Below are positions 2,572-62,568 of a stretch of DNA of 64,000 nucleotides, one piece after another. The notes beneath the pieces were generated by a model, which made no database searches, was not told the origin of the DNA, and saw only the letters and a list, made by a program, of their open reading frames with translations. Positions within the stretch are counted from its first letter, which is position 1. Each line of letters starts with the position of its first letter. The DNA lies in the IMG/VR virus record IMGVR_UViG_3300021959_006010, positions 62,001 through 126,000 of that record. The stretch is one strand, 5' to 3'. Position numbers and translations under genes: made by a program.

Positions 2572-3216
2572 TTAATTACCTCTTACAAATAATTTTTCAG
2601 CAAGCCATCCGCCAGTATCCCATTTGTGCAAACGAACACGCTTTGAATCTTTATGATGCTCTCTATGATATCCTTCGCCTGCTATAAAAAAGTTAAGCCA
2701 AGGTACATTTGCTCCGCCGTCTGTACGATGCCCGATTGTGTTTAACAAACCAAATCCTATTTTAGCAAATACAAATGGTATAGCAGCATATGCTAACCAG
2801 AAATAAGGACTAATCAAAAAACTGATAATATTATGAGCAAATAAGATTTTTACATGGTGTCTATGGAAAAACACTAATCTAGGGTTTGCAAACAAGTCTT
2901 TAGCATACTTAGGCGGAATACTAGGAATATCCCATGTAGTAAGCAATACCTTCCAAAAACCTACGTGTTTGGCACTATGTGGATCTTTTTCACTATCACT
3001 GTGATGATGATGCATTCGATGACTTGCTATCCATCCAATTGGAGTTCTAATATACGCAACACTTAGCATAAACAATCCTACCCATTCAAACCAAACAGGA
3101 ACCTTAAATTGTTTATGACAATAATATCTGTGTAACAGAATACTTGCACCGAAGTGAGAAATAATCTCACTCCATACAATGCCTAAAAATATTGCTATTA
3201 GTAACTCGTAGGTCAT
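2572..3216 (-). CDS. membrane fatty acid desaturase (delta-9-like)
   Basis: His boxes HRYYCH, HRMHHHH and HREHH plus hydrophobic segments. Confidence 0.9.
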   Translation of the reverse strand: MTYELLIAIFLGIVWSEIISHFGASILLHRYYCHKQFKVPVWFEWVGLFMLSVAYIRTPIGWIASHRMHHHHSDSEKDPHSAKHVGFWKVLLTTWDIPSIPPKYAKDLFANPRLVFFHRHHVKILFAHNIISFLISPYFWLAYAAIPFVFAKIGFGLLNTIGHRTDGGANVPWLNFFIAGEGYHREHHKDSKRVRLHKWDTGGWLAEKLFVRGN

Positions 3217-27749: not shown

Positions 27750-28028
27750 TTACAATACAAACAACTGTACCAGTGCAATTGAATTCATAATTACAAACCA
27801 ACTACATAGCACAATAACAAACGCTGCTTTTCTAATAACTGCACTTATCACACCTAAAATACTTCCTACCAAATACATGGGAATAAAAATTTTAGTTGCA
27901 GGATCTAACACTGTAAATGTTAGAACAGCTGAGGCACATATTAATAATGTAGCCTCAGCCATTTCTGCATAAAAAGCAATTGGCGAAAAGTTATAACTAT
28001 CTTTTATAAATTGCCTTACTTTGTTCAC
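27750..28028 (-). CDS. small membrane protein (about 3 TM)
   Basis: 92 aa, hydrophobic. Confidence 0.7.
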   Translation of the reverse strand: MNKVRQFIKDSYNFSPIAFYAEMAEATLLICASAVLTFTVLDPATKIFIPMYLVGSILGVISAVIRKAAFVIVLCSWFVIMNSIALVQLFVL

Positions 28029-37820: not shown

Positions 37821-38519
37821 TTATTTATCTGTATTACCTTTATAGACTAATCGTTCGACTTTACCGATACTATTTTTAGATAACATTTCTATTAATAGCA
37901 TAAGTTTTGAATCTCGAAGATAAAAATAACAATTACACCATTGATAATTTCTTAAATTTTCGAGTGCCTTTTCTGTTATTCTTGATTTATCTTTATTGTT
38001 TTCCAACCAATCAGCAAGTTCAGGATTTTTTCCTGATTTAATATGCACTCTATATTCGTAAGGTAACGGCTCATTTAAAATGTAAACAGATGCATCATCT
38101 AAGAACGAAGAAATATCTTGTTCTCTCGGCTTATGTACTTCTCTAACATAGGGTTTAATACTTGGATCATTTAGTATGCTGTCTAAATCTTCTTCGTTTT
38201 CTAAATAAATGCTTAGTGCATAATAATCAATTCGTAATCTGTAAGAATCTAACTCTTCAAATTTTTCTACTAATTTTTTAGCATAGAAATAGTCATCAGT
38301 AGAGTATTCTTCTACTCTATTTCTATAACCATTTAGTTGCAAAGGATTATTTGACTTGTATAAAAAGTCTAATTCTTCTAAACACTCATACGCAAACTCC
38401 AACTGCGAGTATCTACCGTAACGTGTTGAGAAAATTTTATTAATAGGATTCCTCAAATTAATTTTATACATAAATTTGTTATACCAAAGCTTTCGAGTAG
38501 TATATTTTTTAACCATCAT
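37821..38519 (-). CDS. hypothetical protein
   Basis: 232 aa; AT-rich; overlaps the clpA end. Confidence 0.7.
   Translation of the reverse strand: MMVKKYTTRKLWYNKFMYKINLRNPINKIFSTRYGRYSQLEFAYECLEELDFLYKSNNPLQLNGYRNRVEEYSTDDYFYAKKLVEKFEELDSYRLRIDYYALSIYLENEEDLDSILNDPSIKPYVREVHKPREQDISSFLDDASVYILNEPLPYEYRVHIKSGKNPELADWLENNKDKSRITEKALENLRNYQWCNCYFYLRDSKLMLLIEMLSKNSIGKVERLVYKGNTDK
37822..37829 (-). promoter_or_regulatory. late promoter-like motif GATAAATA
   Basis: Heads the putative head-cargo block. Confidence 0.5.
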
Positions 38520-40767
38520 ATGGTACCTCTAAAGCAGTTTTAGACTTGTAAGACTCTAATACAAATTTATCTTCTTCTGCATTATAATTAATAGTTACAG
38601 TTCCACCATTTTTAAGATCTCCAAAAAGTAATGATCTTGAAAGAGGACGTTTAATTTCGTTATCGATTACACGTTGTAATGGTCTTGCACCCATTTTAGG
38701 ATCGAATCCTTTTTCTACTAGTGCATCTAATGTTTCGTCAGTAACTTCGATATCGACACCTTTTTCTTTAACCATATTTTTAAGTTCAAGCAAGAATTTT
38801 CCAACAATTTTCATCATTACTTCTTTGCTTAAACGTGCAAAAGTAATAATGCCATCTAGACGATTACGGAATTCTGGACTAAAGAAACGTTTAAGTTCTG
38901 TATCTTCGTAGTCGTAATCATTGTCTGTGCTAAATCCAATGGTGTTTTTCTCTGCGGCTTTTGCACCTAGGTTTGTTGTAAGAATAAGTGTGCAGTTACG
39001 AGCATCTGCTTCCCTCCCGTCAGAGCCTGTTACCTTACCATTGTCCATAAGTTGCAATAAGATTTGAGAAACATCTGGGTGTGCCTTTTCAATCTCGTCA
39101 AGCAACAATACACAGTTAGGATGTTCTTGTAACTTAGTAATAAGGATGCCAGCACTATCTTCAAAACCAACATATCCTGGTGGAGAACCAATCAACTTAG
39201 CAACACTATGCTTTTCTTGATACTCACTCATATCAAGACGAACAAGTTTAACACCTAGTTGTTCAGACAATTGTTTAGCAGTTTCTGTTTTACCTGTACC
39301 AGTTGGACCCATAAAGATAAAACTACCAATAGGCTTATCATCTGGTTTAAGACCTGCTTGGCTTACAAGTATTTTATCAACAATTGATTCAATTGCTTCG
39401 TCTTGTCCGAATACTGTTCCTTTAAGGTTCTTTTCAAGATTTATAAGATTGTCGGTTTCTTTTTGACTGATAGTTTCTACTGGAATATTAACCATCTTCG
39501 CGAGTTCAAATTCAATTTCTTCTCTACTAATACGTTTTTCTTCTACGTTTTCTTTTAGATTAAAGCGAGAACACGCTACGTCAATCAAGTCAATTGCTTT
39601 ATCTGGTAGTTTCTTGTCAGTCTGATACTTAACACTTAGTTTAACGGCTGCTTCGATAGCACTTTCTGTAATTTCAGTTGCGTGGAATTCTTCGTAATAT
39701 TTTTTAATTCCACGTAAAATGTCTTTTGTTACTTCAACACTTGGTTCGTCTACACCTACACGTTGGAATCGACGCATTAGAGCACGATCTTTTTCAAAAT
39801 ACTTGCGATATTCTTCCCAGGTAGTAGAAGCAACTACCTTTATATCTCCTTTACTAAGAGCAGGTTTTAGCATATTAGCAAGATCGTTTGAACTGTCTTT
39901 TGATCCAGCACCCGCACCATTCATCATATGTGCTTCGTCAACAAACATAATTGTTTTGCCTTTTTTAGTTAGTGCTTGAATAACTAATTTTAGACGTTCT
40001 TCAAAATCACCACGATATTTTGAACCAGCAAGCATGCCGCCAATGTCAAGATTATACACTTCATAATCTTTTAGGAACTCAGGCACGTTTCCGTTTACAA
40101 TTTTCCAAGCAAGACCTTCTGCAATAGCAGTTTTACCTACACCAGGATCACCAACAAGAATAACATTGTTTTTACTGCGTCGACCTAGTGCAAGAGAAAT
40201 GCTTTCAATTTCCTCTTCACGGCCGATTACAGGATCAATTTTTCCTTTGCTAGCACGATTATTAAGGTTGTCAGTAAATGCTCTTAATGCTTTTTGGGCT
40301 GCACCGCTAATTTCTTCCTCTTCGTAGTCGTCTTCCATTTCTGCATTTATGTAATTAGAGAATTTTTGTTTTTCAATTCCTGCTTTCTCTAACCAATAAC
40401 AACCGATACTTTTCTTTTCACCAAGTATTGCAATAAGAACGTCGGCTAACTCAATTTGCTGACGTCCATGGAACAATACTTGTGTAAATGCTCGATTTAA
40501 GCAACGTTCAACTGTTTGAGTTTTCTTGGGTTTAAAATCTTCAGATTCAATTTTGATATCATCGCAATTATTACGAAGATGATTTTCTAAGTTCTTTTTA
40601 ATAAAAAGAGGATCAGATCCATAACCTTCAATAATTTTTTCGAGATTCTCGTCACATAGCATTGCAAATAGCAAGTGCTCTAGTGTCAAGTATTCGTGCT
40701 TTAATTTTTGTGCATCCTTGATTGCTTTTTCGAACACTAATTGTAGTTCTTTACTAGGTTCAACCAT
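38509..40767 (-). CDS. clpA: ATP-dependent Clp protease ATP-binding subunit ClpA
   Basis: Clp N domain (HEYLTLEHLL), GDPGVGKT, GPTGTGKT, DMSEY.E.HSVAKLIGSPPGYVG, GARPL; 752 aa with no ClpB M-domain. Confidence 0.92.
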   Translation of the reverse strand: MVEPSKELQLVFEKAIKDAQKLKHEYLTLEHLLFAMLCDENLEKIIEGYGSDPLFIKKNLENHLRNNCDDIKIESEDFKPKKTQTVERCLNRAFTQVLFHGRQQIELADVLIAILGEKKSIGCYWLEKAGIEKQKFSNYINAEMEDDYEEEEISGAAQKALRAFTDNLNNRASKGKIDPVIGREEEIESISLALGRRSKNNVILVGDPGVGKTAIAEGLAWKIVNGNVPEFLKDYEVYNLDIGGMLAGSKYRGDFEERLKLVIQALTKKGKTIMFVDEAHMMNGAGAGSKDSSNDLANMLKPALSKGDIKVVASTTWEEYRKYFEKDRALMRRFQRVGVDEPSVEVTKDILRGIKKYYEEFHATEITESAIEAAVKLSVKYQTDKKLPDKAIDLIDVACSRFNLKENVEEKRISREEIEFELAKMVNIPVETISQKETDNLINLEKNLKGTVFGQDEAIESIVDKILVSQAGLKPDDKPIGSFIFMGPTGTGKTETAKQLSEQLGVKLVRLDMSEYQEKHSVAKLIGSPPGYVGFEDSAGILITKLQEHPNCVLLLDEIEKAHPDVSQILLQLMDNGKVTGSDGREADARNCTLILTTNLGAKAAEKNTIGFSTDNDYDYEDTELKRFFSPEFRNRLDGIITFARLSKEVMMKIVGKFLLELKNMVKEKGVDIEVTDETLDALVEKGFDPKMGARPLQRVIDNEIKRPLSRSLLFGDLKNGGTVTINYNAEEDKFVLESYKSKTALEVPYDG

Positions 40768-41266
40768 TCACTTTCCTCTTTTTTAATTTATTTTGTTTTT
40801 TCAACGCTCGGTCCAGTTTAAGTTTACTTACACGATCGGTGTATTCAATACCATTAAGGTGATCAAACTCGTGTAAGAAACAACGTGCATCAATATCATA
40901 TAATTCTATTATACATTCTTTAGCATTTATGTCAAGATATTTGGCAGTAATATATTTAGGTCTTCTTACGTGCAGAAATAATTCGGGATGGCTCAAACAT
41001 CCTTCTATCATTAGCTCAGTTTCTTTGCTAGCAGAAGTTACTTCAGGATTGATAATAACTAAAGGAGTTTTATCTTCTAACAATATAGGTCTCATTACAA
41101 AAATTTGAGCATCAAGTGCAACTTGATTTGCACTCATTCCTAGTCCACTTAGAGTTTGCATAAGTGCTACCATCTTCTCACCTATATCTTTAGCATCTAA
41201 AGCATCAAAGTCAAATGGCTTTACTACCTTCTGTAACCATTCATTCGGTGATTTAACTAATTCCAT
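40760..41266 (-). CDS. def: peptide deformylase
   Basis: GMSANQ, EGCLS, HEFDH. Confidence 0.93.
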   Translation of the reverse strand: MELVKSPNEWLQKVVKPFDFDALDAKDIGEKMVALMQTLSGLGMSANQVALDAQIFVMRPILLEDKTPLVIINPEVTSASKETELMIEGCLSHPELFLHVRRPKYITAKYLDINAKECIIELYDIDARCFLHEFDHLNGIEYTDRVSKLKLDRALKKQNKLKKRKVNG

Positions 41267-42062
41267 CTCTTATATTCCTAATCTTATCTAACAGGGCATC
41301 GTCTTTTATTTTTGGAACAATAACCCTTACTTTAACAAAAATATTTCCTCTTCGACTATCATTAAGATACGGTAAACCATATCCAGCAATGCTTAAAACA
41401 GTATCTGGATTTGTTCCTGCAGGTATTTTAATATTTAATCTTCTTGAATCAAGTGTTTCAATTTCAGTCTCTATACCTAGTATAGCATCAAATGCAGAAA
41501 TGTCTATCGTTGTATGCAAATTTTGTCCATCTCTGCGCCATTTTTTTAATGGAGTAGTAATAAACTTTACAATTAGATCTCCTCTAGACACTCTTGGATT
41601 TCCGTCATCGCCTAAACCTCTATACCTAATCATTTGGTTATCGCCAACACCTCGAGGAACTTCGATTTCTACTCTTTCATTTTTTCCACTTTGCAACCTA
41701 TACTCAAATATTAATAATCGTCCATATAAAACATCCCTCAATTCGATACTAGCTGATACGTGTATGTCTCTATTTTTTGGCTGAGGTCTTCCTCGTGCAT
41801 TTCTAAACATTGAGTTAAAAATGTCATCAAAGTTTCCGTAGGCATTTGTAAAATCCGAAGAGTTCATATTAACTTGCGGATTGTCGTATGCTTGTCTTTT
41901 TTGTGGATCTTTTAGTGTATCGTATGCTTCGTTAATTTCTTTAAACTTCTTCTCATCACCGCCTCTATCAGGATGGTTTTGCATAGCAAGTTTACGATAT
42001 GCGCTCTTTAGTTCTTTATCGGAAGCATTTTTTCCTACACCTAAAATAGAATAATAGTCCAT
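41253..42062 (-). CDS. dnaJ: class B J-domain chaperone (DnaJ/CbpA-like, no Zn finger)
   Basis: DYYSILGV, HPDRGGD, FKEINEAY, G/F region, C-terminal GDL/GN domains. Confidence 0.9.
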   Translation of the reverse strand: MDYYSILGVGKNASDKELKSAYRKLAMQNHPDRGGDEKKFKEINEAYDTLKDPQKRQAYDNPQVNMNSSDFTNAYGNFDDIFNSMFRNARGRPQPKNRDIHVSASIELRDVLYGRLLIFEYRLQSGKNERVEIEVPRGVGDNQMIRYRGLGDDGNPRVSRGDLIVKFITTPLKKWRRDGQNLHTTIDISAFDAILGIETEIETLDSRRLNIKIPAGTNPDTVLSIAGYGLPYLNDSRRGNIFVKVRVIVPKIKDDALLDKIRNIRDGIS

Positions 42063-42107
42063 ACAATTACTTATCGCATGGACTATTAAGGTTTTATGGT
42101 AATGGTT

Positions 42108-42584
42108 TTACTTTTTACCTTTACCGGTATATGCTTGAGCACCAAAGAATGCCATAACAATTGCTGCAACTGAAACGAAATATGTTGCTGCCATTGATCC
42201 TAGTACACTTGCTGCTTGCTCTAAACTTAACCATGTTGCTAGTACTACTGCAAATGGATAAAGTAGCATACCAAATAGTGCAAACCAAGACATTTTACGC
42301 TGTGCATCACGCATTGCATCTTGGTCTTCAAGTTCTTTACGCTTGAATTCAAGATACATTGCTTCTTCTTCTGCACTTACATGACCGTCTCCGTTTGTAT
42401 CAGCAGGATGCCATCCGCCCATTGATGCTGCTGGTGCCGCGTCTTCTTTCATTGAGTACGACACTTCAGGTGCTGCTGCTGGTTTCGGAGCCGCTGCTGC
42501 TGGTTTCGGTGCTGGCTTATCTACTGGTGCAGCTTTTCCCGGTCCGCCATTACTTTTTAATTCTTCTGCTTTTTTACGTGGCAT
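42108..42584 (-). CDS. EF-hand-containing two-TM membrane protein, putative holin
   Basis: DTNGDGHVSAEE loop; two C-terminal TM helices; end of the lysis cassette. Confidence 0.6.
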   Translation of the reverse strand: MPRKKAEELKSNGGPGKAAPVDKPAPKPAAAAPKPAAAPEVSYSMKEDAAPAASMGGWHPADTNGDGHVSAEEEAMYLEFKRKELEDQDAMRDAQRKMSWFALFGMLLYPFAVVLATWLSLEQAASVLGSMAATYFVSVAAIVMAFFGAQAYTGKGKK

Positions 42585-42585
42585 A

Positions 42586-43344
42586 TTAACCCTCCATTTT
42601 TTCTAAGTTAGCAATATAATTACCAATACTGTGATCACTAAAGTTATCGATGCCGCCTTGTTTCAAGCCCATCGCAAAACCACGCCAGCGATCTTTCATT
42701 CTTTGCCATCCTGACATTTTACGTACTTCGCCATAAGCATTCATATAATGCTCTGTACCGTGATGTGTATAACCCATAATTTTCAAAGGCACTCTTGTAA
42801 CAACATCGTTGTTGTTTACCCATCTGTGATGCTCTACTCCTAGGTGTACGCAATATTTTTTCCATCCTACTCTTGGAGAACCGTATGTATATAATTCTAC
42901 AGGATCAGGAACTTTTGTGTTGTACAGACAACGGCTTGCCATAATAGTTGCCATTGCTGCACCTAAGCTATGTCCGCAAAACCATAAGTCTTGTTTTGGT
43001 TGTTTTGACATAAGATCTGCCATTACCATAGGCCATAACTCGTCTACCTCTGCTTTAAAGCCTTGATGCACACGGCTTATGGTCTCTGCTATTACTGGTA
43101 ATGCTTTTAAATCTGCTGCAATATCATTAAATTGTGTTGGTTGTGTTCCACGGCAAGCAATAACCATATCATCCTTACTTGCAAATCTGTATGCTTGAGC
43201 ACCGTGTTTGTCATAAAATTCAACCTCTGTAAATCCCAAAGGTTTAACAAGTTTTTTTACTTCTTTTTGATCATCTTTATATGCGATAGAAGCTAACTTA
43301 GCAAATAGTAAACTTCTGTCTTTGAAACTTAGATCTTTAATCAT
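42586..43344 (-). CDS. lipase class 3 (alpha/beta hydrolase)
   Basis: IACRGT, VHQGF, GHSLG, DVVTRVP, DHS triad. Confidence 0.9.
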   Translation of the reverse strand: MIKDLSFKDRSLLFAKLASIAYKDDQKEVKKLVKPLGFTEVEFYDKHGAQAYRFASKDDMVIACRGTQPTQFNDIAADLKALPVIAETISRVHQGFKAEVDELWPMVMADLMSKQPKQDLWFCGHSLGAAMATIMASRCLYNTKVPDPVELYTYGSPRVGWKKYCVHLGVEHHRWVNNNDVVTRVPLKIMGYTHHGTEHYMNAYGEVRKMSGWQRMKDRWRGFAMGLKQGGIDNFSDHSIGNYIANLEKMEG

Positions 43345-43634
43345 TTTTTGCCCTCCAAGGTTTTGATTCTTTCTTCTAGTTCATCTATTTTCTTAGTAAC
43401 ATAAGGATACTTTTTACGCCACGCATCAGTCGGTTGCTCAAACCACGTTAACCCCCAACGCTCAACTAGATAATCAAGTGTTTGATCTAGTTTAGCGTAA
43501 CACCAAAGACCTGCTCTAGTATCCTTAAAATATGCTAAAAAGGCTGCACCGACTAGTGAGCCCAAAATTGCTGTATAAATCCACAGCGTATCGTCAAATA
43601 ATTTTTCTACAATGCCCATAAATTGCCCCTTCAT
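43341..43634 (-). CDS. small membrane protein
   Basis: N-terminal TM helix, C-terminal coiled coil. Confidence 0.7.
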   Translation of the reverse strand: MKGQFMGIVEKLFDDTLWIYTAILGSLVGAAFLAYFKDTRAGLWCYAKLDQTLDYLVERWGLTWFEQPTDAWRKKYPYVTKKIDELEERIKTLEGKK

Positions 43635-43644
43635 ACGCTAAACG

Positions 43645-43652
43645 TATTTATA
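43645..43652 (-). promoter_or_regulatory. T4-type late promoter motif TATAAATA
   Basis: Exact consensus upstream of the 43634 gene. Confidence 0.55.
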
Positions 43653-44187
43653 CGGAATTACGTCTTATTCCTAAGGCCTTACTAGCTCTGTATGATTCCA
43701 CGCTTACTTTATTTGACTGATTCCCACCTAAGATGTAATAGTACTCAACATCACCAACTTTTACACTTCTTAGGAAAAATCCTACATGCCCTTGCCATCC
43801 TTGATTTCCTCTCGGAAACACTACAATATCTCCTGCTTGGATATCATTTTTATCTACTTCGATACCCCATTCCAAAAAGCTTCTAGCCATTAGAGGAACA
43901 TCGCTAACACTTTCGCTACCTACTATTCCGCTTTCGTTTAATACCGCATTTACAAATGCAGCACACCATTCTGTGCGAACAGGATCAACACCGATAAAGT
44001 CTTTTAATTCTGATCTGTTAGATGCTTCGTGTAATCCGTAATAATTGTATGCTGTTGATGCTGGATTACCAGAGCTTACTTTTAATATATTAGGTCTAAG
44101 CTCTGGTATAGGTATGCCGTTAGAGTCTGTTACTCCACATGCAGATATAAAAGTCGCTAGAAGTAGCGAGATACTTATTACCCTCAT
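43648..44187 (-). CDS. NlpC/P60-CHAP-like peptidoglycan hydrolase (TIGR02594-like), predicted lipoprotein
   Basis: WCAAFVN (Cys), GHVGF (His), LGGNQ; lipobox FISAC. Confidence 0.8.
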   Translation of the reverse strand: MRVISISLLLATFISACGVTDSNGIPIPELRPNILKVSSGNPASTAYNYYGLHEASNRSELKDFIGVDPVRTEWCAAFVNAVLNESGIVGSESVSDVPLMARSFLEWGIEVDKNDIQAGDIVVFPRGNQGWQGHVGFFLRSVKVGDVEYYYILGGNQSNKVSVESYRASKALGIRRNSV

Positions 44188-44207: not shown

Positions 44208-44669
44208 TTAATTAAATAGATTGAATCCGCTATTTTCTTCTGATGGTTGTGATGTATTTTCTTGACGTTGCGCCTCAGCTTCATCAAGTGCTTGTTCTGC
44301 TTCTTTGTAATAGTTTTCGTATGCTAGTATAATCTGCTGTTGCTGTTGTACTAAAGCACGAATGTCTGAAAAGTTTAAACCTAGTTTACCATATCCATCA
44401 CCTGTTAGTGCGTAAAATGCAAATGCTTTGCCTTCGCTTTCAAGGCGTGCTCTTACTTCTTCGATGTTAGATTCATTGATAACAATCCACTCAACACGGC
44501 GCATATTAACTTCGTCAACAGGCGGTAGAACTAGTTCCGGTTTATCAATCGGTTTGCTGGTTACTTGTATCGTTTGTGGGGTCGTTGAGCATGCCGCGAG
44601 ACTTATAATCATCATAAAGCCAAGGGCACTCTTTGTTAAAAGACCTTGCATTTTCTGCATTTTTCTCAT
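44208..44669 (-). CDS. o-spanin-like lipoprotein
   Basis: Lipobox SLAAC then Pro-rich segment; 5' end overlaps the i-spanin (true start probably a later Met). Confidence 0.7.
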   Translation of the reverse strand: MRKMQKMQGLLTKSALGFMMIISLAACSTTPQTIQVTSKPIDKPELVLPPVDEVNMRRVEWIVINESNIEEVRARLESEGKAFAFYALTGDGYGKLGLNFSDIRALVQQQQQIILAYENYYKEAEQALDEAEAQRQENTSQPSEENSGFNLFN

Positions 44670-45048
44670 CCTCTGTTAATTCGGCTCCGCTTAGTAATTC
44701 AAAACATCTGCCTGCATTGTATGTACCTCTATTTACAGCACGTTCGATGCCTTCTGGATTTGCAATAGCTGCTGCTGTCATATCAATTTCTTGTAATTTA
44801 TTAGCAAGTTGCTGGTTTTGTCGACGAATGTTAGCAAATTCCTCATTTACTTTTCTTAACTCTTCATTGGCGGCAGCAAAATCCGCCGCCATTGTTTTGA
44901 TTGTTTCTTCGTTGGTTGCTACTGCCAGTTCTAATTTAGCATTATTTTCAGTCAGCACAGAAATGGTTTTCTGAGTTTCAGTGTAATACCAGTATCCGAT
45001 ACCGCCCATAGTTATTATAACAATTAAAAGTATCCCTGACAGTTTCAT
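44545..45048 (-). CDS. i-spanin-like protein
   Basis: N-terminal TM, long coiled coil, two Cys; directly after the endolysin. Confidence 0.7.
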   Translation of the reverse strand: MKLSGILLIVIITMGGIGYWYYTETQKTISVLTENNAKLELAVATNEETIKTMAADFAAANEELRKVNEEFANIRRQNQQLANKLQEIDMTAAAIANPEGIERAVNRGTYNAGRCFELLSGAELTEDEKNAENARSFNKECPWLYDDYKSRGMLNDPTNDTSNQQTD

Positions 45049-45050
45049 TT

Positions 45051-45899
45051 TTATTCCCCAAACATCATAGCAAGTGATTTAGGACCCATAACACCATCCG
45101 GTGTAAGTCCATTTTCTTCTTGCCACGCTTTTACATGTGCTTCAGTGCCACGTCCAAAAATTCCGTCTGCACCAATTTCTAATTCTTCTTGTACTGCTTT
45201 AACAGTTGGTCCTTTTGAACCTAAGCGAATTGTTTCATAAACAATAGCACTTGGATCCCAGTCGCCACCTAATACTTCCATTGCATGATGATAGTGTTTT
45301 TCTCTATCTTCAAGTCCGATGTATCCACCGTTAATGCGTTTTGTAGCACCTTTAATATCAAGGGCATCGGCATATTTGTTAAGGTCGTTAGTGTCCCAGA
45401 ACCAGCAAGCACTATCTAAAGCACCCTTTTTAGTACGCACATATTCTACCGCTTCTTCTGGGGACATTTCCATTTCTTCCCCAAATTTTGTATAATTGTA
45501 TCGTCCAGTGAGTTGTAGAATGCCGCCTCCCCTAAAGGTCCAGCCGTCCCCGCTATCTGTATCGCCGTTGTCCATTCTATTTGCGTAAATAACGTTTGCA
45601 ATTTTACGAGGTTGTCTGTGATATTCTTGAGCATCTCTTCCTGCCCTTTCAAAATATTTTCCGAATATTGCATTAAGTGCTTTTGCACTGTAATTTAAAT
45701 TTTCTGTTAGTACTTTAAAGTTGTTTGATTCGTGTCCGCATTGTGCGATAAACATTGCTACACGTTCTGGTGTGTCTACTTCCCAAAGCGGAAGTATTTC
45801 ACACATAGCGTCATACCAATCTTCTGCTTCTTCGTTACCTCTTAACAGTTCAATGACCATTTCTTCGGTAAATTCAAATTCAAAGTCTTCAGCTGCCAT
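45051..45899 (-). CDS. endolysin: GH19 muramidase plus C-terminal peptidoglycan-binding domain
   Basis: FIAQCGHES, RGGGILQLTGRYNY, SACWFW, INGGYIGLEDR; DGIFG...DG.MG PG-binding motif. Confidence 0.92.
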   Translation of the reverse strand: MAAEDFEFEFTEEMVIELLRGNEEAEDWYDAMCEILPLWEVDTPERVAMFIAQCGHESNNFKVLTENLNYSAKALNAIFGKYFERAGRDAQEYHRQPRKIANVIYANRMDNGDTDSGDGWTFRGGGILQLTGRYNYTKFGEEMEMSPEEAVEYVRTKKGALDSACWFWDTNDLNKYADALDIKGATKRINGGYIGLEDREKHYHHAMEVLGGDWDPSAIVYETIRLGSKGPTVKAVQEELEIGADGIFGRGTEAHVKAWQEENGLTPDGVMGPKSLAMMFGE

Positions 45900-47466: not shown

Positions 47467-48186
47467 ATGGGTGCAAAAAGGAAAGCACAATCACGTGCAA
47501 ACAAAAACTACAACAACGTAGTTGACATTAACTTTCATCAAAAAAAGCAACAAGTACAAATCCTTCCAAGAAATAGAAACCAAGAAACTTACGTGTTAAA
47601 ACTGCTAGACGAAACAAAAGATATAGTCTTTGGCATAGGTCCAGCAGGAACAGGCAAAACTCTATTGGCTGTGCAAGTAGCGGTTAAACTATTTAAAGAA
47701 GGAAAAGTTGATAAAATTATTGTTACAAGACCGGCAGTAAGTGTAGATGAGGACCTGGGATTCCTACCAGGTACACTAGAGCAAAAAATGGCTCCGTGGA
47801 CAAGGCCTATTTTTGATGTATTAAGAGAATATTTTGATGCTCGTCAAATTGAAGGGATGATAGAAGAAGGGATTATCGAAATCGCACCGCTTGCATATAT
47901 GCGAGGACGTACATTTAAAAATTCCTTTATTCTAGCAGACGAGATGCAAAACGCAACTCCTAATCAAACAAAAATGTTACTAACACGTCTCGGAGAAGGT
48001 TCTATGATGGCTGTGACTGGTGACCTAGCACAGGCAGATAGATTAAAAGACAACGGTCTAATAGATTTTACAAACCGCTTATTAGAATCAAATTTAACAC
48101 ATATCGACATAGTCAATTTTGGTCAAGGAGATATTGAAAGACATGAGGCAGTTAAAGAAGTTTTACAAGTTTACGGAGACGACTAA
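47467..48186 (+). CDS. phoH: PhoH-like ATPase
   Basis: GPAGTGKT, TRPAV, LGFLPG, YMRGRT, DEMQN, TRLG, GDLAQ; AGGAGG RBS supports the 47467 start. Confidence 0.95.
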   Translation: MGAKRKAQSRANKNYNNVVDINFHQKKQQVQILPRNRNQETYVLKLLDETKDIVFGIGPAGTGKTLLAVQVAVKLFKEGKVDKIIVTRPAVSVDEDLGFLPGTLEQKMAPWTRPIFDVLREYFDARQIEGMIEEGIIEIAPLAYMRGRTFKNSFILADEMQNATPNQTKMLLTRLGEGSMMAVTGDLAQADRLKDNGLIDFTNRLLESNLTHIDIVNFGQGDIERHEAVKEVLQVYGDD

Positions 48187-48608
48187 GTCTTTATAACTTC
48201 AATATTAGATTGATTTAAAAAATCAATGCCCTGTGTACTACGATAATCATTTTTGTAGTACACAGTGGCTATTCCTGATTGATAGATTAGTTTTGCACAA
48301 TCAATACAAGGTGAGTGTGTAATAAAGATACTTGCGCCTTCACCACTTTCAGGCGAACGTGCTAGTTTAGCGATTGCGTTGCTTTCTGCATGGAGGACCT
48401 CTGGCTTAGTTGTTAATTTAAAATTTGCACCATTACCTGAATGTGTTTCGCAACAGTTATCCCAGCCACTAGGCATACCATTGTAACCAATACTGATGAT
48501 ACGATCGTCCTTTACAACAATTGCACCTACTTGTAAACGAGCTGCTGAACTTAGTTGTGCAAATCGTTCTGCAACATCCATGTATGCATTAATAAACTTT
48601 TCTTTCAT
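48183..48608 (-). CDS. dCMP deaminase
   Basis: IGYNG, LHAESNAI, SPCIDC. Confidence 0.92.
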   Translation of the reverse strand: MKEKFINAYMDVAERFAQLSSAARLQVGAIVVKDDRIISIGYNGMPSGWDNCCETHSGNGANFKLTTKPEVLHAESNAIAKLARSPESGEGASIFITHSPCIDCAKLIYQSGIATVYYKNDYRSTQGIDFLNQSNIEVIKT

Positions 48609-48858
48609 TGTGGGGATCTCTTGATTTACTACCTGATTCTCTTTTTATTTGATATAACAAATACTCATTGCGAGTATATATTAAATCCCAACTACGTCCT
48701 TTAATAGGAGGTCGACCCATGTCGTCGAATGTAATTTCTAGTAATATGTATTTTTTTAACCAAATACGCTTTTTACTAAAGCTACTTCTTACAGGCCACC
48801 AGGCAAACTTTTCATGTGCTGTCTCTACTTGATCAAAGTATGCACTTATATGTTTCAT
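48589..48858 (-). CDS. hypothetical protein
   Basis: 89 aa coupled ORF. Confidence 0.65.
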   Translation of the reverse strand: MKHISAYFDQVETAHEKFAWWPVRSSFSKKRIWLKKYILLEITFDDMGRPPIKGRSWDLIYTRNEYLLYQIKRESGSKSRDPHNERKVY

Positions 48859-49721
48859 ACAGCCATTGGTGCTTTAATTGAATCCATTGGATTGTAATTG
48901 TGTAATTTATATTGACTAGGAACAGTTTCTATTAGATCTTCTAAATTTTTAAATACAGGCATTTCAAGTATAGGACCTTTTTGAGGCTCGCGAGTAATTT
49001 GTTCTTTTACTTGATCCATATGATTTTGATAGATATGACAATCTCCACCTGTCCATACAAAGTCTCCTGGTTTTAAATTAAGCAATTGTGCAAACATGTG
49101 TGTAAGCAAACTATAACTGGCAATATTAAATGGAACACCTAAAAACATATCAGCACTGCGTTGGTATAATTGACAACTTAGTTCGCCATCCTGTACATGG
49201 AACTGAAAAAGTGTATGACACGGTGGTAAAGCCATTACACTTACCATATCAGCATTCCATGCACTTACAATATGTCTACGGCTTTCGGGATTATAATGCA
49301 AACTTTCTAATACATTTGCTATTTGATCGACATGGCCGAACTTGGCATCCCAACTGCGCCATTGGTGCCCGTATACCGGTCCCAAATCTTTACGAAAATC
49401 ATTATTAATATAACCTAAATCTTTTGCTTGTGCATCTGCATTTGCAGTCCAAATAGTGTTTTTATCTACTAGTTCTGTTTTGTCTTTTTCAAAAGTAATT
49501 TCTGCAAGTCGACGCTCGTCTGCACTTCCTTCGAGCATCCAAAGTAGTTCTCCAACTACTGCTCTCCATGCCAGTTTCTTTGTTGTAACAGCTGGAAATT
49601 CGTTGCGTAAATCAAAACGCATTTGATAACCAAAAACGCCCCGTGTGCCTACACCTGTTCTGTCATCGCGATCCTTACCGTGTTCTAATATATGTTCTAG
49701 TGCATCAAGATATTGCTTCAA
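48855..49721 (-). CDS. thyA: thymidylate synthase
   Basis: DRTGVGT, ELLW, GPVYG.QW, LPPCH, YQRSAD.FLGVPFN, HIY.NH. Confidence 0.96.
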   Translation of the reverse strand: MKQYLDALEHILEHGKDRDDRTGVGTRGVFGYQMRFDLRNEFPAVTTKKLAWRAVVGELLWMLEGSADERRLAEITFEKDKTELVDKNTIWTANADAQAKDLGYINNDFRKDLGPVYGHQWRSWDAKFGHVDQIANVLESLHYNPESRRHIVSAWNADMVSVMALPPCHTLFQFHVQDGELSCQLYQRSADMFLGVPFNIASYSLLTHMFAQLLNLKPGDFVWTGGDCHIYQNHMDQVKEQITREPQKGPILEMPVFKNLEDLIETVPSQYKLHNYNPMDSIKAPMAV

Positions 49722-53422: not shown

Positions 53423-54094
53423 TTATTCGCGATTTCCGAGTAGTGATAATAGCATCTGGAATAGGTTTATAAAATTCAAATATAAACTAATTGCAAATTG
53501 TATTCCGTATCTTGGATCGCCGCCATGACTTATATAAATGTTTTTAGCGTTTTGTGTGTCCCAAGCAGTTAATCCTGTAAACACAACAACACCAATAATA
53601 CTAATTACAAACTGTAACGCACTACTTGCTAAAAAGATATTAACAACCATTGCAATAATGATACCAATTAAGCCCATAAGCAAAAAGTGTCCAAATCCTG
53701 TAAGGTCACGTTTAGTAGTATAACCCCATAGACTTGCACTTGCAAAAGTTGCTGCTGTAATAAAGAAAACTTGTGCAATGCTTGCGCCTGTATATATAGC
53801 AAAAATTGGTGCAAGTCCGACACCCATCACTGCTGTAAAAGTGTAGTAGAATGTGCGAAGTGTATCATAACTCCAATTTTGTCCTGCAAAGCTATACCAC
53901 AAGATCATTCCTAATGGCGCTAGTGCAAAAATCCATATTGCTCCTGCCATTGCAGCAAGCATTCCGGTTGAATAAACTAGCCATGCTACAATTCCACTAA
54001 CAGCAAGTCCTGCCGCAGTATGGTTGTACATGTTAAGCATAAACTCACGTAAACCTTCGTCGTACTGTCTACGTGCTTCTGTAATTGTACTCAT
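53423..54094 (-). CDS. Bax inhibitor-1/YccA family membrane protein
   Basis: DEGLREFMLNMY, about 7 TM helices, YTTKRDL, WDTQ, LYLNFINLF; GGAG RBS. Confidence 0.9.
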   Translation of the reverse strand: MSTITEARRQYDEGLREFMLNMYNHTAAGLAVSGIVAWLVYSTGMLAAMAGAIWIFALAPLGMILWYSFAGQNWSYDTLRTFYYTFTAVMGVGLAPIFAIYTGASIAQVFFITAATFASASLWGYTTKRDLTGFGHFLLMGLIGIIIAMVVNIFLASSALQFVISIIGVVVFTGLTAWDTQNAKNIYISHGGDPRYGIQFAISLYLNFINLFQMLLSLLGNRE

Positions 54095-54145
54095 TGTATT
54101 TCTCCTCAAATAAAGGTACCGTCCATAAATTAATAGGAGGTAGAT

Positions 54146-60900: not shown

Positions 60901-60908
60901 TATTTATG
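60901..60908 (-). promoter_or_regulatory. late promoter-like motif CATAAATA
   Basis: Variant motif upstream of the 60877 gene. Confidence 0.45.
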
Positions 60909-62568
60909 TGCCGTATTTTCTTACTCTAGGTCTTGGATATGCTTTTGAATATCCAGCTGTATCTCTTATCCAATAGTTTGACTCTGGCCATAAAGTTCCG
61001 TTTTCCGGTCTTTCGTTATAGTGATACAAATATCTATCTGCTGCACCTTGTAAAGCAGTATAGTCTGTGTAGCCACCGCCGGTGTCTCCTATTTGTCCAG
61101 CTTTTGCATGATGGAACAAATAATCCCTTGCATCTTGTTGGGTCATCCATGGATACATTTCCATTGCACACGCAAGTACTCCGCACACTTGAGGACTTGC
61201 CATTGATGTTCCTGTTATTTTTGCAAGTGCATAGGTTGCACCTGTTCTTGGATCTAAATTTCCGCCATAAGATGTAAGAGTATTAACACTACTTTGTATT
61301 TGAGTGCCAGGTGCCCATATGTCTACACGAGGTCCACAGTTACTACTATCTGCTTGATATTCTTGGAATAGTGTTCCAACATTTCCTACACAAATAACAT
61401 CGTCTGCTGCTTGAGGTGCACCACCTTCGTGGAAGTAGTAAGTACTACCTGCTACAAATCTGTTGTCGAAATCATTGCCACCTTGTACATCCATTAAAGA
61501 ATAATTGTTTCCAGCGGCTGCAACAACTAGGATCCCTTCATTAATTGCGTCTCTAATATCTAATTCTAGTGCATTATATCTAGCTGGCACAACAGCAGTT
61601 AAAGTTCCTTGTATATTAAAAACTGTGATTCCATAACTTGCAAGTGTACCAGAACTAAACGGTGCATTTGAATCAGTTACTCCCTGAGATACAACAGAAG
61701 TAATATTTGCAATAGGAATCTGGAAACTATATCCCCAACTGTTATTTGTAATTGTAGGATTTTTTCTTCCAGTATCTGGATTTACTGCTTTGTTTTGATG
61801 CCATACTCTAACATAATCAAAAAGCGATAAAGCACTTAAAGCATTTACATTTGTGCCATACGGGTTAATATTATAAATGTTTGAACGTCGAGCCCACCCT
61901 TGTGTGTTTCCGCAGGCTGTTCCTGCAACGTGCGATCCGTGACTGTTGTCATCAGTTAAGTCGGTGCTTCCGTTATCATATGGAGTATACACATAATTTC
62001 CGTTTGCGCCGCCTGTGACTTGGTTAGTAATACTAAACCAATTGAACTGATTTACTCTACTACCTCCAGTACCATCCGAGTTAACAGCATACTCAGGATG
62101 CGCAGGATCAAAGTGTCCATCAATAATTACAACATCAACATCTTTGCCTGTTGTTTGAACGTTAATTGTCCCGCTTTGGTTTGAAACAAAAACTCCTCCG
62201 TTCGATCCCCAGTTTCCACGTTGTGTGCCTTCGTATACTCTAAGTAATCCCCAGTTGACATCGTTTACATCTTCAATTGAACTTTTATCAAAATTAGAAC
62301 TAGTCTGCTCGTAAAAACGTGTGACTACCATTCCTAATTCTTCCGGAGTAAGAGATACGCCGATTACTCGCGGATCGTTTTTAACTTGTTCTGCTTCTTC
62401 TTCAGTAAGCATATAATGCGTATTTCTACTTGGAATTCTTCTGTTGGCTACGTCAACTGCACGATCAGGAATATATAAATTTCCTCCCGGAGTTTCCATA
62501 TCGTTGTAGAAATCGTCCAGTTCTTCTTTACTTCTTAGTGATACTACATATTCTCTTAATTCAGACAT
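60904..62568 (-). CDS. subtilisin-like S8 serine protease with I9-like prodomain
   Basis: Catalytic triad VIIDG, HGSHVAG, GTSMASP; oxyanion AAGN. Confidence 0.92.
   Translation of the reverse strand: MSELREYVVSLRSKEELDDFYNDMETPGGNLYIPDRAVDVANRRIPSRNTHYMLTEEEAEQVKNDPRVIGVSLTPEELGMVVTRFYEQTSSNFDKSSIEDVNDVNWGLLRVYEGTQRGNWGSNGGVFVSNQSGTINVQTTGKDVDVVIIDGHFDPAHPEYAVNSDGTGGSRVNQFNWFSITNQVTGGANGNYVYTPYDNGSTDLTDDNSHGSHVAGTACGNTQGWARRSNIYNINPYGTNVNALSALSLFDYVRVWHQNKAVNPDTGRKNPTITNNSWGYSFQIPIANITSVVSQGVTDSNAPFSSGTLASYGITVFNIQGTLTAVVPARYNALELDIRDAINEGILVVAAAGNNYSLMDVQGGNDFDNRFVAGSTYYFHEGGAPQAADDVICVGNVGTLFQEYQADSSNCGPRVDIWAPGTQIQSSVNTLTSYGGNLDPRTGATYALAKITGTSMASPQVCGVLACAMEMYPWMTQQDARDYLFHHAKAGQIGDTGGGYTDYTALQGAADRYLYHYNERPENGTLWPESNYWIRDTAGYSKAYPRPRVRKYGT

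What the first reader, a model, noticed from the sequence alone, without database searches (positions are those of the whole stretch)
42108..42584. EF-hand two-TM protein at the end of the lysis cassette: possible Ca2+-sensing holin
Seen: a canonical 12-residue loop DTNGDGHVSAEE, a charged helix and two TM helices, with no other clear multi-TM holin near the endolysin and spanins. Inference: lysis timing could be gated by calcium, which I do not know to be described for characterised holins.
Basis: inference. Interest (0 to 1): 0.6.

Follow-up and report, generated by a model that had tools for sequence, protein, structure and literature searches.

The report
Calcium-loop two-helix membrane protein, lysis cassette
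A small phage membrane protein with one calcium-binding loop facing the cytoplasm belongs to a large, unnamed family of aquatic-phage proteins that sits beside cell-bursting genes in several unrelated phages, so it probably helps time host lysis, but neither hole formation nor calcium control has been tested.

Summary
Window 42108-42584 (-) encodes a 158-aa protein with a strong ribosome-binding site. It has a conserved N-terminal motif, a Pro/Ala linker, the loop DTNGDGHVSAEE, a conserved charged helix, two TM helices and a Lys-rich tail. It is the last gene of a cassette holding an endolysin, i- and o-spanins, a CHAP lipoprotein, a 97-aa single-TM protein and a lipase.

The loop is under selection. 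Its ligand positions are invariant in 120 close homologs and canonical in eight phage homologs down to 24% identity. It is a single loop-plus-exit-helix with no entering helix. By charge bias it faces the cytoplasm.

The family is large: more than 7,000 clusters at 90% identity and 547 at 50%. It has no Pfam, PHROG or NCBIfam name, and all cultured carriers are aquatic phages. In six of eight distinct isolates the gene abuts endolysin, spanin or holin genes. In T4-like phages it lies in baseplate modules. About 40% of family clusters lack the loop, so calcium sensing is an accessory.

Best reading: a class-II-topology holin-like lysis protein (holin or holin partner) with a cytoplasmic Ca2+ module. 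This is a new variant of a known kind. Function is inferred, not shown.

The parts
42108..42584 (-). Complete ORF of the calcium-loop two-TM protein (P0001, 158 aa plus stop)
   Evidence: more than 7,225 homolog clusters
42590..42595 (-). Shine-Dalgarno GGAGGG, 5 nt upstream of the ATG, inside the 3' end of the lipase gene
   Evidence: read from the sequence
42552..42584 (-). N-terminal motif MPRKKAEELKS (residues 1-11), nearly invariant as MPRKKPE[ED]LKS in long-form homologs
   Evidence: alignment A2
42420..42551 (-). Pro/Ala/Lys-rich low-complexity linker (residues 12-55); variable in length, absent from short forms, predicted disordered
42366..42401 (-). 12-residue EF-type Ca2+ loop DTNGDGHVSAEE (residues 62-73)
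42291..42365 (-). Exiting helix continuing as the conserved charged juxtamembrane helix (residues 74-98). E79, F80, R82, E86, D87 and D89-R96 are invariant in close homologs
42228..42290 (-). TM helix 1 (residues about 99-119), with the conserved W-F-A-L-x-G-M-L-L-Y-P motif
42135..42203 (-). TM helix 2 (residues about 128-150). The short acidic loop between the helices (residues 120-127) is predicted to be periplasmic
42111..42134 (-). Short Lys-rich C-terminal tail (residues 151-158), predicted to be cytoplasmic
43341..43634 (-). 97-aa single-TM protein (p97; predicted N-out/C-in, Trp-rich and coiled-coil C-terminal part). Conserved neighbour of the target and a possible holin or partner
42586..43344 (-). 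Class-3 lipase gene inserted between p97 and the target
   Evidence: Pfam Lipase_3 at E 2.5e-21
43648..44187 (-). CHAP-domain lipoprotein (signal peptide with Cys lipobox) in the cassette
44208..44669 (-). o-spanin lipoprotein, overlapping the i-spanin gene
   Evidence: PHROG 812 Rz-like spanin
44545..45048 (-). i-spanin (N-terminal TM plus coiled coil)
   Evidence: PHROG 739 and others
45051..45899 (-). Soluble endolysin (GH19-like catalytic part plus PG_binding_1); no TM or signal segment
42052..42088 (-). 16-pair hairpin followed by a T-rich run, just after the target's stop and covering the DnaJ start codon. Possibly a terminator or a translational element

Best explanation
P0001 belongs to a large, so far unnamed family of small inner-membrane proteins of aquatic phages. 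The invariant core is a conserved charged juxtamembrane helix (E-[DN]-x-D-x-x-R-D-A-Q-R-x-M-x-W-F-A-L) followed by a two-helix TM hairpin and a short Lys-rich tail. Both ends are predicted to lie in the cytoplasm. I take it to be a late-expressed, holin-like lysis-timing protein with class II topology. It would accumulate in the inner membrane and take part in hole formation, giving the soluble endolysin access to the wall, after which the spanins finish the envelope. In phages where it is the only multi-TM protein of the cassette (CRP-345, CRP-9, CRP-207) it is probably the hole-former itself. In the window's jumbo phage it probably acts together with the conserved 97-aa single-TM protein. 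In CRP-701 and CRP-810 it probably acts with a GTA-type holin. In a majority of lineages, this one included, a single EF-type loop-helix Ca2+ site is fused to the cytoplasmic start of the juxtamembrane helix. Bacterial cytoplasmic Ca2+ is sub-micromolar and seawater holds about 10 mM, so the site should be empty until the membrane leaks. Ca2+ entry would then change the conformation or pairing of the juxtamembrane helices, and so sharpen or modulate triggering. Shown here: sequence features, conservation, family size, gene neighbourhoods. Inferred: topology, Ca2+ binding, lysis function and the coupling between them.
For: Gene order places it with lysis genes in several unrelated phages. The orders found are: CRP-345, EF2TM / u-spanin / endolysin; CRP-9, EF2TM / endolysin / u-spanin; CRP-207, TM-anchored lysozyme / EF2TM with overlapping stop and start; CRP-701 and CRP-810, EF2TM / GTA_holin_3TM / endolysin; DC31, EF2TM / i-spanin-like / L-Ala-D-Glu peptidase. 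Metagenomic contigs L015-L019 keep EF2TM and a GTA-holin-like gene while the downstream endolysin type changes, which is the mosaic pattern typical of lysis cassettes. In relatives of the window's phage the order is endolysin / i-spanin / o-spanin / p97 / EF2TM, and p97 and EF2TM overlap by 20 nt. About 21 of 80 IMG/VR loci have spanins within 3 kb, and 24-29 have p97 upstream. In CRP-345's late arm it is the only annotated protein with two or more TM segments apart from the u-spanin. No GTA holin is found in CRP-207, CRP-345, CRP-9, DC31, HTVC008M or the window's genome. No T4-type holin is found in HTVC008M or Melnitz, so those phages have an open holin slot. Over 217 members the inter-helix loop has K+R 0.29 against D+E 1.9, and the C-tail has K+R 2.1 against D+E 0.46. 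For calcium: the loop's ligand positions are invariant while the other positions vary. EF-hand_5, _1, _6 and _7 match 55, 34, 19 and 9 of 150 representatives, best E 4.7e-8. All top PDB profile hits are EF-hand proteins. Four of 150 representatives give weak Phage_holin_3_6 matches, best E 1.8e-4.
Against: No experiment bears on any member, and every database record calls them hypothetical. P0001 matches no described holin family in Pfam, PHROGs or NCBIfam. The charged C-terminal domain typical of holins is reduced to about 8 residues, and there is no dual-start motif. In T4-like phages (26 of 80 IMG/VR loci, plus HTVC008M and Melnitz) the gene lies between baseplate genes gp51 and gp29. EF-less members lie next to gp25/gp6 or gp13. 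Where a GTA-type holin is adjacent, the hole-former role may already be filled. About 33 of 79 full-length-like representatives lack a strict loop. The loop has no entering helix and no second EF-hand in the chain, and the homodimer prediction gave no answer. The structure model is of low confidence.
Confidence: 0.5

Rival explanations
1. It is an antiholin or lysis regulator, not a hole-former. It would bind the real holin (p97 in this phage, the GTA-type holin in CRP-701 and CRP-810) through its TM hairpin or juxtamembrane helix and delay or release triggering, with Ca2+ as the input signal. This would be analogous in logic to T4 RI and RIII acting on holin T.
For: It sits immediately upstream of a GTA_holin_3TM gene in CRP-701, CRP-810 and L015-L019. 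It forms a conserved pair with p97, sometimes with overlapping reading frames. The cytoplasmic helix is very strongly conserved, which suggests a protein-binding surface. A sensor module that is present in some lineages and absent in others fits a regulator.
Against: In CRP-345, CRP-9 and CRP-207 no other multi-TM protein lies in the cassette that it could regulate. p97 is absent from HTVC008M, Melnitz, CRP-207, CRP-345 and DC31, though that search had no positive control. No interaction has been shown.
Confidence: 0.25
2. It is a late membrane protein with no role in lysis. It could be a superinfection-exclusion or immunity protein like the two-TM T4 Imm. It could be a membrane anchor for tail-hub or baseplate assembly. 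It could be a virion-carried protein that inserts into the host membrane during genome delivery.
For: It recurs inside baseplate and neck modules of T4-like phages: gp54 / gp26 / gp51 / EF2TM / gp29 in HTVC008M, Melnitz and 26 of 80 IMG/VR loci, and next to gp25/gp6 or gp13 for EF-less members. Accessory genes often sit beside lysis cassettes, so adjacency alone is not proof.
Against: The same family abuts endolysin, spanin or holin genes in podo-like, sipho-like and jumbo phages, often with overlapping stop and start codons. T4's own holin gene also sits among tail-fibre genes, so a structural neighbourhood does not exclude a holin. Exclusion proteins are usually early genes, whereas this gene lies in late arms.
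Confidence: 0.17
3. It is a small viral ion channel (viroporin) that alters host Ca2+ or other ion balance during infection, with the loop acting as a Ca2+ gate. Lysis timing would be affected only indirectly.
For: It is a two-TM hairpin of a kind that could oligomerise, with a Ca2+ site next to the membrane. The same phage encodes a Bax1-I/TMBIM-type protein at window 53423-54109, from a family described as Ca2+ leak channels (the channel description is from my own knowledge).
Against: The eight-residue inter-helix loop has no pore-helix or selectivity motif. The Bax1-I gene does not co-occur with the family in five other phages. There is no similarity to known channels.
Confidence: 0.08

Closest known systems
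Class II holins and pinholins (for example phage 21 S21-68)
   Same: Small size, two TM helices, predicted N-in/C-in topology, basic C-terminus, and a gene inside a lysis cassette. In CRP-207 it lies next to a lysozyme with an N-terminal TM segment.
   Different: No sequence similarity to any Pfam, PHROG or NCBIfam holin model. It has a cytoplasmic N-terminal domain of 60-100 residues with a Ca2+ loop, where known holins have a short N-terminus. The C-tail is only about 8 residues. There is no dual-start motif. The window's endolysin is soluble, so a pinhole alone would not release it.
Two-component holin-like pairs of mycobacteriophages (LysF1a, two TM and N-in/C-in, plus LysF1b; abstract of PMC13056207; Ms6 Gp4/Gp5 from my own knowledge)
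   Same: A two-TM N-in/C-in protein and another TM-domain holin-like protein (single-TM for p97 here and for Ms6 Gp5) are encoded together in the lysis cassette and jointly set lysis time. This resembles p97 plus EF2TM.
   Different: No homology. The hosts are Gram-negative aquatic bacteria. There is a Ca2+ loop. The pairing is not universal in the family.
T4 holin T with antiholins RI and RIII
   Same: In logic only: a separate sensing element tunes holin triggering. Like T4's t gene, the T4-like members lie among tail genes.
   Different: RI senses from the periplasm and there is no sequence relation. Holin T is absent from HTVC008M and Melnitz.
GTA_holin_3TM (PF11351)
   Same: It is the direct neighbour in CRP-701, CRP-810 and L015-L019, in the same operon-like run with an endolysin.
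   Different: It is a different protein family. It is absent from the window's genome and from five other carriers.
EF-hand Ca2+-binding motifs (Pfam EF-hand_5/_1/_6; calmodulin, calbindin D9k, Entamoeba CaBP) and the loop-helix 'F-hand' of dockerins
   Same: A 12-residue loop with ligands at positions 1, 3, 5, 9 and 12, Gly at 6 and a hydrophobic residue at 8, followed by an exiting helix. Like the dockerin motif (my own knowledge) it lacks the entering helix.
   Different: There is a single copy per chain, fused to a TM hairpin. P0001 itself scores below the Pfam threshold (16 bits against 25.9). Glu at position 12 is EF-hand-like rather than dockerin-like.
Phage_holin_3_6 (PF07332, holin superfamily III)
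   Same: Four of 150 family representatives give weak matches, best E 1.8e-4.
   Different: P0001 gives no match. The genome's own weak PF07332-like ORF is unrelated to the family by profile comparison. I treat this as a lead, not as membership.

Membership tests
EF-hand Ca2+-binding motif | 12-residue loop with oxygen ligands at positions 1, 3, 5 and 12, Gly at 6 and a hydrophobic residue at 8 | tested here: met
   DTNGDGHVSAEE. These positions are invariant in 120 of 120 close homologs and canonical in eight distant phage homologs.
EF-hand Ca2+-binding motif | Entering (E) helix before the loop | tested here: not met
   Short forms begin 5-13 residues before the loop. The preceding segment SMGGWHPA is Gly/Pro-rich, and the AlphaFold2 model has no helix before residue 71.
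EF-hand Ca2+-binding motif | Exiting (F) helix starting in the last loop residues | tested here: met
   The model helix runs from residue 71 onward and continues into TM1 (low confidence).
EF-hand Ca2+-binding motif | EF-hands occur in pairs, in one chain or through dimerisation | tested here: inconclusive
   There is one loop per chain. The homodimer-plus-Ca prediction returned 'no answer'.
EF-hand Ca2+-binding motif | Score above the Pfam gathering threshold | tested here: not met
   P0001 scores 16 bits on EF-hand_5 against a cut-off of 25.9. However, 55 of 150 family representatives match EF-hand_5 at E <= 0.01, best 4.7e-8.
EF-hand Ca2+-binding motif | Measured Ca2+ binding | not testable with these tools
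   Needs ITC, 45Ca overlay or NMR on residues about 56-98.
Holins (functional class) | Small phage-encoded protein with at least one TM helix | tested here: met
   158 aa (short forms about 100-110 aa) with two TM helices.
Holins (functional class) | Encoded next to endolysin and spanin genes | tested here: met
   It is the last gene of the window's cassette. It directly abuts lysis genes in six cultured phages and in many contigs. This is not so in T4-like phages.
Holins (functional class) | Hydrophilic, highly charged C-terminal domain | tested here: inconclusive
   There is only a short basic tail of about 7-8 residues, with K+R 2.1 against D+E 0.46. The large charged domain is N-terminal instead.
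Holins (functional class) | Match to a described holin family model | tested here: not met
   P0001 gives no Pfam, PHROG or NCBIfam holin hit. Only four of 150 relatives match Phage_holin_3_6, and weakly.
Holins (functional class) | Lethal, energy-poison-triggerable hole formation that releases endolysin | not testable with these tools
   Needs expression and lambda S-amber complementation.
Pinholin / SAR-endolysin systems | Two TM helices with N-in/C-in topology | tested here: met
   Prediction from charge bias over 217 members.
Pinholin / SAR-endolysin systems | Partner endolysin carries an N-terminal signal-anchor-release segment | tested here: not met
   The window's endolysin has no hydrophobic N-terminal segment. 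Only the CRP-207 lysozyme has one.
GTA_holin_3TM (PF11351) | Match to the family model | tested here: not met
   P0001 gives no hit and nothing is found anywhere in the genome. The positive control worked.

The most novel reading that the evidence does not exclude
The cytoplasmic EF-type loop is a membrane-integrity sensor. In Ca2+-rich water, the first leak lets Ca2+ into the cell. That leak could come from nascent holes or from a superinfecting phage's genome entry. Ca2+ binds the loop and switches the holin-like hairpin, giving either all-or-none triggering (positive feedback) or a lysis-inhibition-like delay. This would be the first ion-gated lysis clock, and it would operate in phages of the most abundant marine bacteria (SAR11, OM43, Roseobacter).
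Probability: 0.2. Interest if true: 0.8.

Novelty: new variant of a known kind. Interest (0 to 1): 0.6.

Why it matters
The lysis machinery of the dominant marine phages is essentially unannotated. That includes pelagiphage HTVC008M, the OM43 phage Melnitz and the HMO-2011-type and other roseophages. HTVC008M and Melnitz lack a T4-type holin, and every member of this family is labelled hypothetical. It offers a concrete candidate for the timing component of lysis in these phages, and lysis timing affects burst size and carbon release in the ocean. A Ca2+-binding module on a holin-like protein has no counterpart in the holin literature that I could search. The idea is easy to test, because several carriers are in culture and the protein is small.

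Tried and rejected
- Homodimer prediction of residues 56-158 with two Ca2+ gave 'no answer' (score 0.10, mark 0.42). It counts neither for nor against pairing.
- The AlphaFold2 monomer had mean pLDDT 60 and pTM 0.24. I used it only for secondary-structure layout and ran no fold search on it.
- ESM Atlas look-alikes were only unnamed viral clusters. The structural rows had TM-scores below 0.5.
- The search for related loci with the diverse alignment A1 failed because no stretch was conserved enough. I repeated it with the single domain.
- Profile comparison of the family with the genome's other weak holin-like ORF showed no relation.
- Pfam and PHROG scans of neighbour-cluster representatives from the 80 IMG/VR loci added only T4-like replication and auxiliary genes and one more spanin.
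- Bax1-I does not co-occur with the family in five other phages, so I dropped the idea of a linked Ca2+ module.
- p97 was not found in five cultured carriers, but that search had no positive control.
- tblastn with three EF-less members found only the same aquatic phages, all annotated as hypothetical.
- Sequencing-run search found only DNA metagenomes (estuary and marine) and no RNA run, so I could not check expression and did not use read laying.
- Literature searches for an EF-hand or calcium link to holins found only CHAP-endolysin Ca2+ sites and general holin papers. The HMO-2011-type phage paper does not discuss the gene.
- I considered a dual-start (holin/antiholin) reading of Met45 and Met55. 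I rejected it because no internal Met is conserved in the long forms.
Full report
**What is at the coordinates**

Window 42108-42584 on the minus strand is an open frame of 158 codons. A GGAGGG ribosome-binding site lies 5 nt upstream, and the start codon sits one base after the stop of the preceding gene.

The product has six parts, in order:
- An N-terminal motif, MPRKKAEELKS.
- A Pro/Ala/Lys-rich linker, to about residue 55.
- The loop DTNGDGHVSAEE (residues 62-73).
- A charged helix (74-98).
- Two hydrophobic helices (about 99-119 and 128-150).
- The tail TGKGKK.

Hydropathy peaks and the AlphaFold2 secondary structure agree on this layout. The model shows a disordered N-terminus, one long helix 71-118, a turn, and helix 122-152. 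The model is of low confidence (pLDDT 60), so I use it only for layout.

The window is part of an IMG/VR virus record of 275,366 bp, 37% G+C, estimated 77% complete. The same protein also occurs on a 346,714-bp contig. This is therefore an uncultured jumbo phage. It is found in estuary and marine metagenomes.

**Surroundings**

All genes here are on the minus strand. Upstream of the target lie, in order:
- A soluble endolysin with a GH19-like part and PG_binding_1 (45051-45899).
- An i-spanin (44545-45048).
- An overlapping o-spanin lipoprotein (44208-44669).
- A CHAP-domain lipoprotein (43648-44187).
- A 97-aa protein with one N-terminal TM helix, which I call p97 (43341-43634).
- A class-3 lipase (42586-43344).

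Downstream come DnaJ, peptide deformylase and a ClpA-like ATPase. A long hairpin with a T-rich tail follows the target's stop codon and covers the DnaJ start.

It is also right that no other multi-TM ORF lies in the cassette. Elsewhere the genome has other small multi-TM ORFs. One is a three-TM ORF at window 27750-28028. Another is a 102-aa two-TM ORF outside the window that gives a weak Phage_holin_3_6 match.

**Is the loop more than chance?**

The evidence says yes.
- The strict EF-loop pattern turns up in 39 of 200,000 shuffles of the protein. It occurs once in canonical form in the 275-kb record.
- All 120 listed close homologs keep D-x-N-G-D-G-x-[IV]-[SD]-x-x-E, while positions 2, 7, 10 and 11 vary freely.
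- Eight homologs from cultured phages, down to 24% identity, all have canonical loops, for example DLNGNGTLDQDE and DIDGDGQITAEE.
- Among 150 representatives of the wider family, 55 match Pfam EF-hand_5 (best E 4.7e-8), 34 match EF-hand_1, 19 match EF-hand_6 and 9 match EF-hand_7.
- A family profile searched against PDB sequences returns only EF-hand proteins among the 60 listed matches. The E-values are marginal (0.009 to about 1), as expected for a 25-residue motif.

It is not a complete EF-hand, for two reasons. There is no entering helix, since the short forms start only 5-13 residues before the loop. There is also only one loop per chain. It is best described as an EF-type loop-plus-exiting-helix, and the exiting helix continues straight into the juxtamembrane helix and TM1.

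**Topology**

Over 217 family members, the short segment between the two hydrophobic helices carries 0.29 Lys+Arg against 1.9 Asp+Glu. The C-tail carries 2.1 Lys+Arg against 0.46 Asp+Glu. By the positive-inside rule, the hairpin has both ends in the cytoplasm. The long, highly charged N-terminal part has no signal sequence, which fits that assignment. The Ca2+ loop is therefore predicted to face the cytoplasm, not the periplasm. This is an inference.

**The family**

The word-based search found at least 7,225 clusters at 90% identity related to P0001, and 647 more for the roseophage branch. None has a Pfam domain on record. The exhaustive profile search found 547 clusters at 50% identity, all between 59 and 178 aa long. 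The Atlas clusters nearest to the protein are all viral and unnamed.

In a collection of 50,697 phage records, the only carriers are aquatic phages:
- Pelagibacter phage HTVC008M.
- The four Methylophilales Melnitz phages.
- Roseobacter phages CRP-1, CRP-9, CRP-207, CRP-345, CRP-701 and CRP-810.
- Limnohabitans phage DC31.
- One freshwater-spring contig.

Every one of these is annotated as hypothetical. The paper describing the HMO-2011-type phages does not discuss the gene.

The core of the family is the juxtamembrane helix plus the hairpin. Its nearly invariant motif is E-[DN]-x-D-x-x-R-D-A-Q-R-x-M-x-W-F-A-L-x-G-M-L-L-Y-P. Of 79 full-length-like representatives, 46 have a strict loop. The other 33 have a degenerate loop, an unrelated N-terminus, or look like miscalled starts. 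The Ca2+ loop is thus a frequent but dispensable N-terminal module.

The long forms in jumbo phages add the MPRKKPE[ED]LKS motif and the Pro/Ala linker.

**Gene neighbourhoods**

This is the main functional evidence.

| Phage or contig | Gene order around the family member (EF2TM) |
|---|---|
| CRP-345 | EF2TM, unimolecular spanin, endolysin |
| CRP-9 | EF2TM, endolysin, unimolecular spanin |
| CRP-207 | Lysozyme with an N-terminal TM segment, then EF2TM with overlapping stop and start |
| CRP-701, CRP-810 | EF2TM, GTA_holin_3TM (PF11351; E 1e-18 to 1e-20), endolysin |
| DC31 | Tail-anchored protein, EF2TM, i-spanin-like protein, L-Ala-D-Glu peptidase |
| Contigs L015-L019 | EF2TM and a GTA-holin-like protein are kept, while the third gene switches between GH19-like and M15-like enzymes |
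| Relatives of the window's phage | Endolysin, i-spanin, o-spanin, p97, EF2TM, DnaJ; no CHAP or lipase genes; p97 overlaps EF2TM by 20 nt |

The enzyme switching in L015-L019 is the mosaic pattern usual for lysis cassettes.

Among 80 IMG/VR loci of close relatives:
- 24-29 have p97 just upstream.
- About 21 have spanins within 3 kb.
- 13 show the order lipase, nuclease, p97, EF2TM.
- 26 are T4-like, with the order gp54, gp26, gp51, EF2TM.

In CRP-345's late arm, EF2TM is the only annotated protein with two or more TM segments apart from the spanin.

The GTA-type holin is absent from CRP-207, CRP-345, CRP-9, DC31, HTVC008M and the window's genome. The positive control for that search worked. 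The T4-type holin is absent from HTVC008M and Melnitz, with T4 itself as the positive control.

**What argues the other way**

- In T4-like phages the gene lies inside baseplate or neck modules. It sits between gp51 and gp29 in HTVC008M and Melnitz. EF-less members sit beside gp25/gp6 or gp13. T4's own holin gene sits among tail-fibre genes. A structural neighbourhood is therefore compatible with a late lysis gene, but it also allows an assembly or virion role.
- P0001 matches no described holin model.
- Only four of 150 relatives give weak Phage_holin_3_6 matches. The genome's own weak match to that model is unrelated to this family.
- The tail is short, and no dual-start motif is conserved.
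- Where a GTA-type holin is adjacent, the protein may be a partner rather than the hole-former.
- The homodimer-with-Ca2+ prediction gave no answer.

**Most likely mechanism**

I commit to a holin-like, class-II-topology lysis-timing protein (confidence about 0.5). It would be made late, accumulate in the inner membrane and take part in hole formation. That would let the soluble endolysin reach the wall, after which the spanins disrupt the outer membrane.

In this jumbo phage it most likely works with p97. That would make a two-component arrangement like the holin-like pairs of mycobacteriophages (PMC13056207, from the abstract; Ms6 Gp4/Gp5 from my own knowledge).

The cytoplasmic Ca2+ site sits at the start of the helix that runs into TM1. 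Cytoplasmic Ca2+ in bacteria is sub-micromolar and seawater holds about 10 mM (established knowledge). The site should therefore be empty until the membrane leaks. Binding could then drive pairing or reorientation of the juxtamembrane helices and make triggering abrupt, or it could report a superinfecting phage. These steps are inference.

The rivals are:
- A pure antiholin or regulator (0.25).
- A late membrane protein unrelated to lysis, such as an exclusion, hub-assembly or ejection protein (0.17).
- A small ion channel (0.08).

**Comparison with what is known, and novelty**

It works most like a class II holin, or like a member of a two-protein holin-like pair. It is not a member of any described holin family at HMMER sensitivity.

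Its Ca2+ motif fits the EF-hand loop definition. It fails the helix-loop-helix and pairing criteria, and in that respect it resembles the loop-helix motif of dockerins.

Full-text searches found no paper that links an EF-hand or a calcium-binding domain to a holin or antiholin. From my own knowledge, the only Ca2+ sites known in lysis proteins are in CHAP endolysins.

I therefore rate it a new variant of a known kind: a new, very abundant family of holin-like proteins with an accessory Ca2+ module. The claim rests on comparative genomics only.

**Verdict**

The loop is not universal in the family. Interest is 0.6.

Noticed in passing
window 53423-54109 (-): A phage-encoded 228-aa multi-TM protein matches Pfam Bax1-I (BI-1/TMBIM/YccA family) at E 6e-56. 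From my own knowledge, members of that family are described as pH-sensitive Ca2+ leak channels. It does not co-occur with the EF-loop family in five other phages.
   Followed up: partly
window 43341-43634 (-): A 97-aa single-TM protein (predicted N-out/C-in, with a Trp-rich WGWTWL segment and a C-terminal coiled coil) is conserved immediately upstream of the target family in 24-29 of 80 IMG/VR loci. In some loci the two reading frames overlap by 20 nt. It has no family name, only faint XhlA/hemolysin TM similarity. It may be the holin or the target's partner.
   Followed up: partly
window 42586-43344 (-) and 43648-44187 (-): A class-3 lipase and a CHAP-domain lipoprotein are inserted in the lysis cassette. 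The order lipase, nuclease, p97, EF2TM recurs in 13 of 80 related loci. The lipase could act on envelope lipids during lysis, in the manner of mycobacteriophage LysB, but this was not tested.
   Followed up: partly
window 38509-42062 (-): DnaJ (J domain plus C-terminal domain), peptide deformylase and a 752-aa ClpA-like two-AAA ATPase are encoded directly downstream of the lysis cassette. They stay linked to the target gene in about 20 of 80 related loci.
   Followed up: partly
window 42052-42088 (-): An AT-rich hairpin with a 16-pair stem and a T-rich tail lies right after the target's stop codon and includes the DnaJ start codon. It may be a terminator or a translational control element.
   Followed up: no
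window 42420-42584 (-): Long forms of the family carry a nearly invariant N-terminal motif MPRKKPE[ED]LKS on a variable Pro/Ala/Lys linker. This looks like a tethered short linear motif. It occurs only once in this genome.
   Followed up: partly
window 27750-28028 (-): A 92-aa ORF with three predicted TM helices has no Pfam or PHROG match. It is an alternative class-I-like holin candidate, about 14 kb from the cassette.
   Followed up: partly
L109:1438-1746 (-), about G000:C1:148960-149268, outside the window: A 102-aa two-TM ORF with charged ends lies beside tail-fibre-like genes and gives a weak Phage_holin_3_6 match (E 0.003, 15 bits). It is another holin-like candidate in the same phage, and it is unrelated to the target family by hhalign.
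   Followed up: partly
L009:5463-6020 (+) and L045:4327-4884 (+): In another jumbo-phage lineage (a 274-kb contig) the family member is followed directly by a 185-aa protein with a Pfam RyR (ryanodine-receptor repeat) domain.
   Followed up: no
window 2572-3216 (-), 60904-62568 (-), 48183-49721 (-): Auxiliary genes in the window include a fatty-acid desaturase-like membrane protein, a subtilase-family protease, dCMP deaminase and thymidylate synthase.
   Followed up: no
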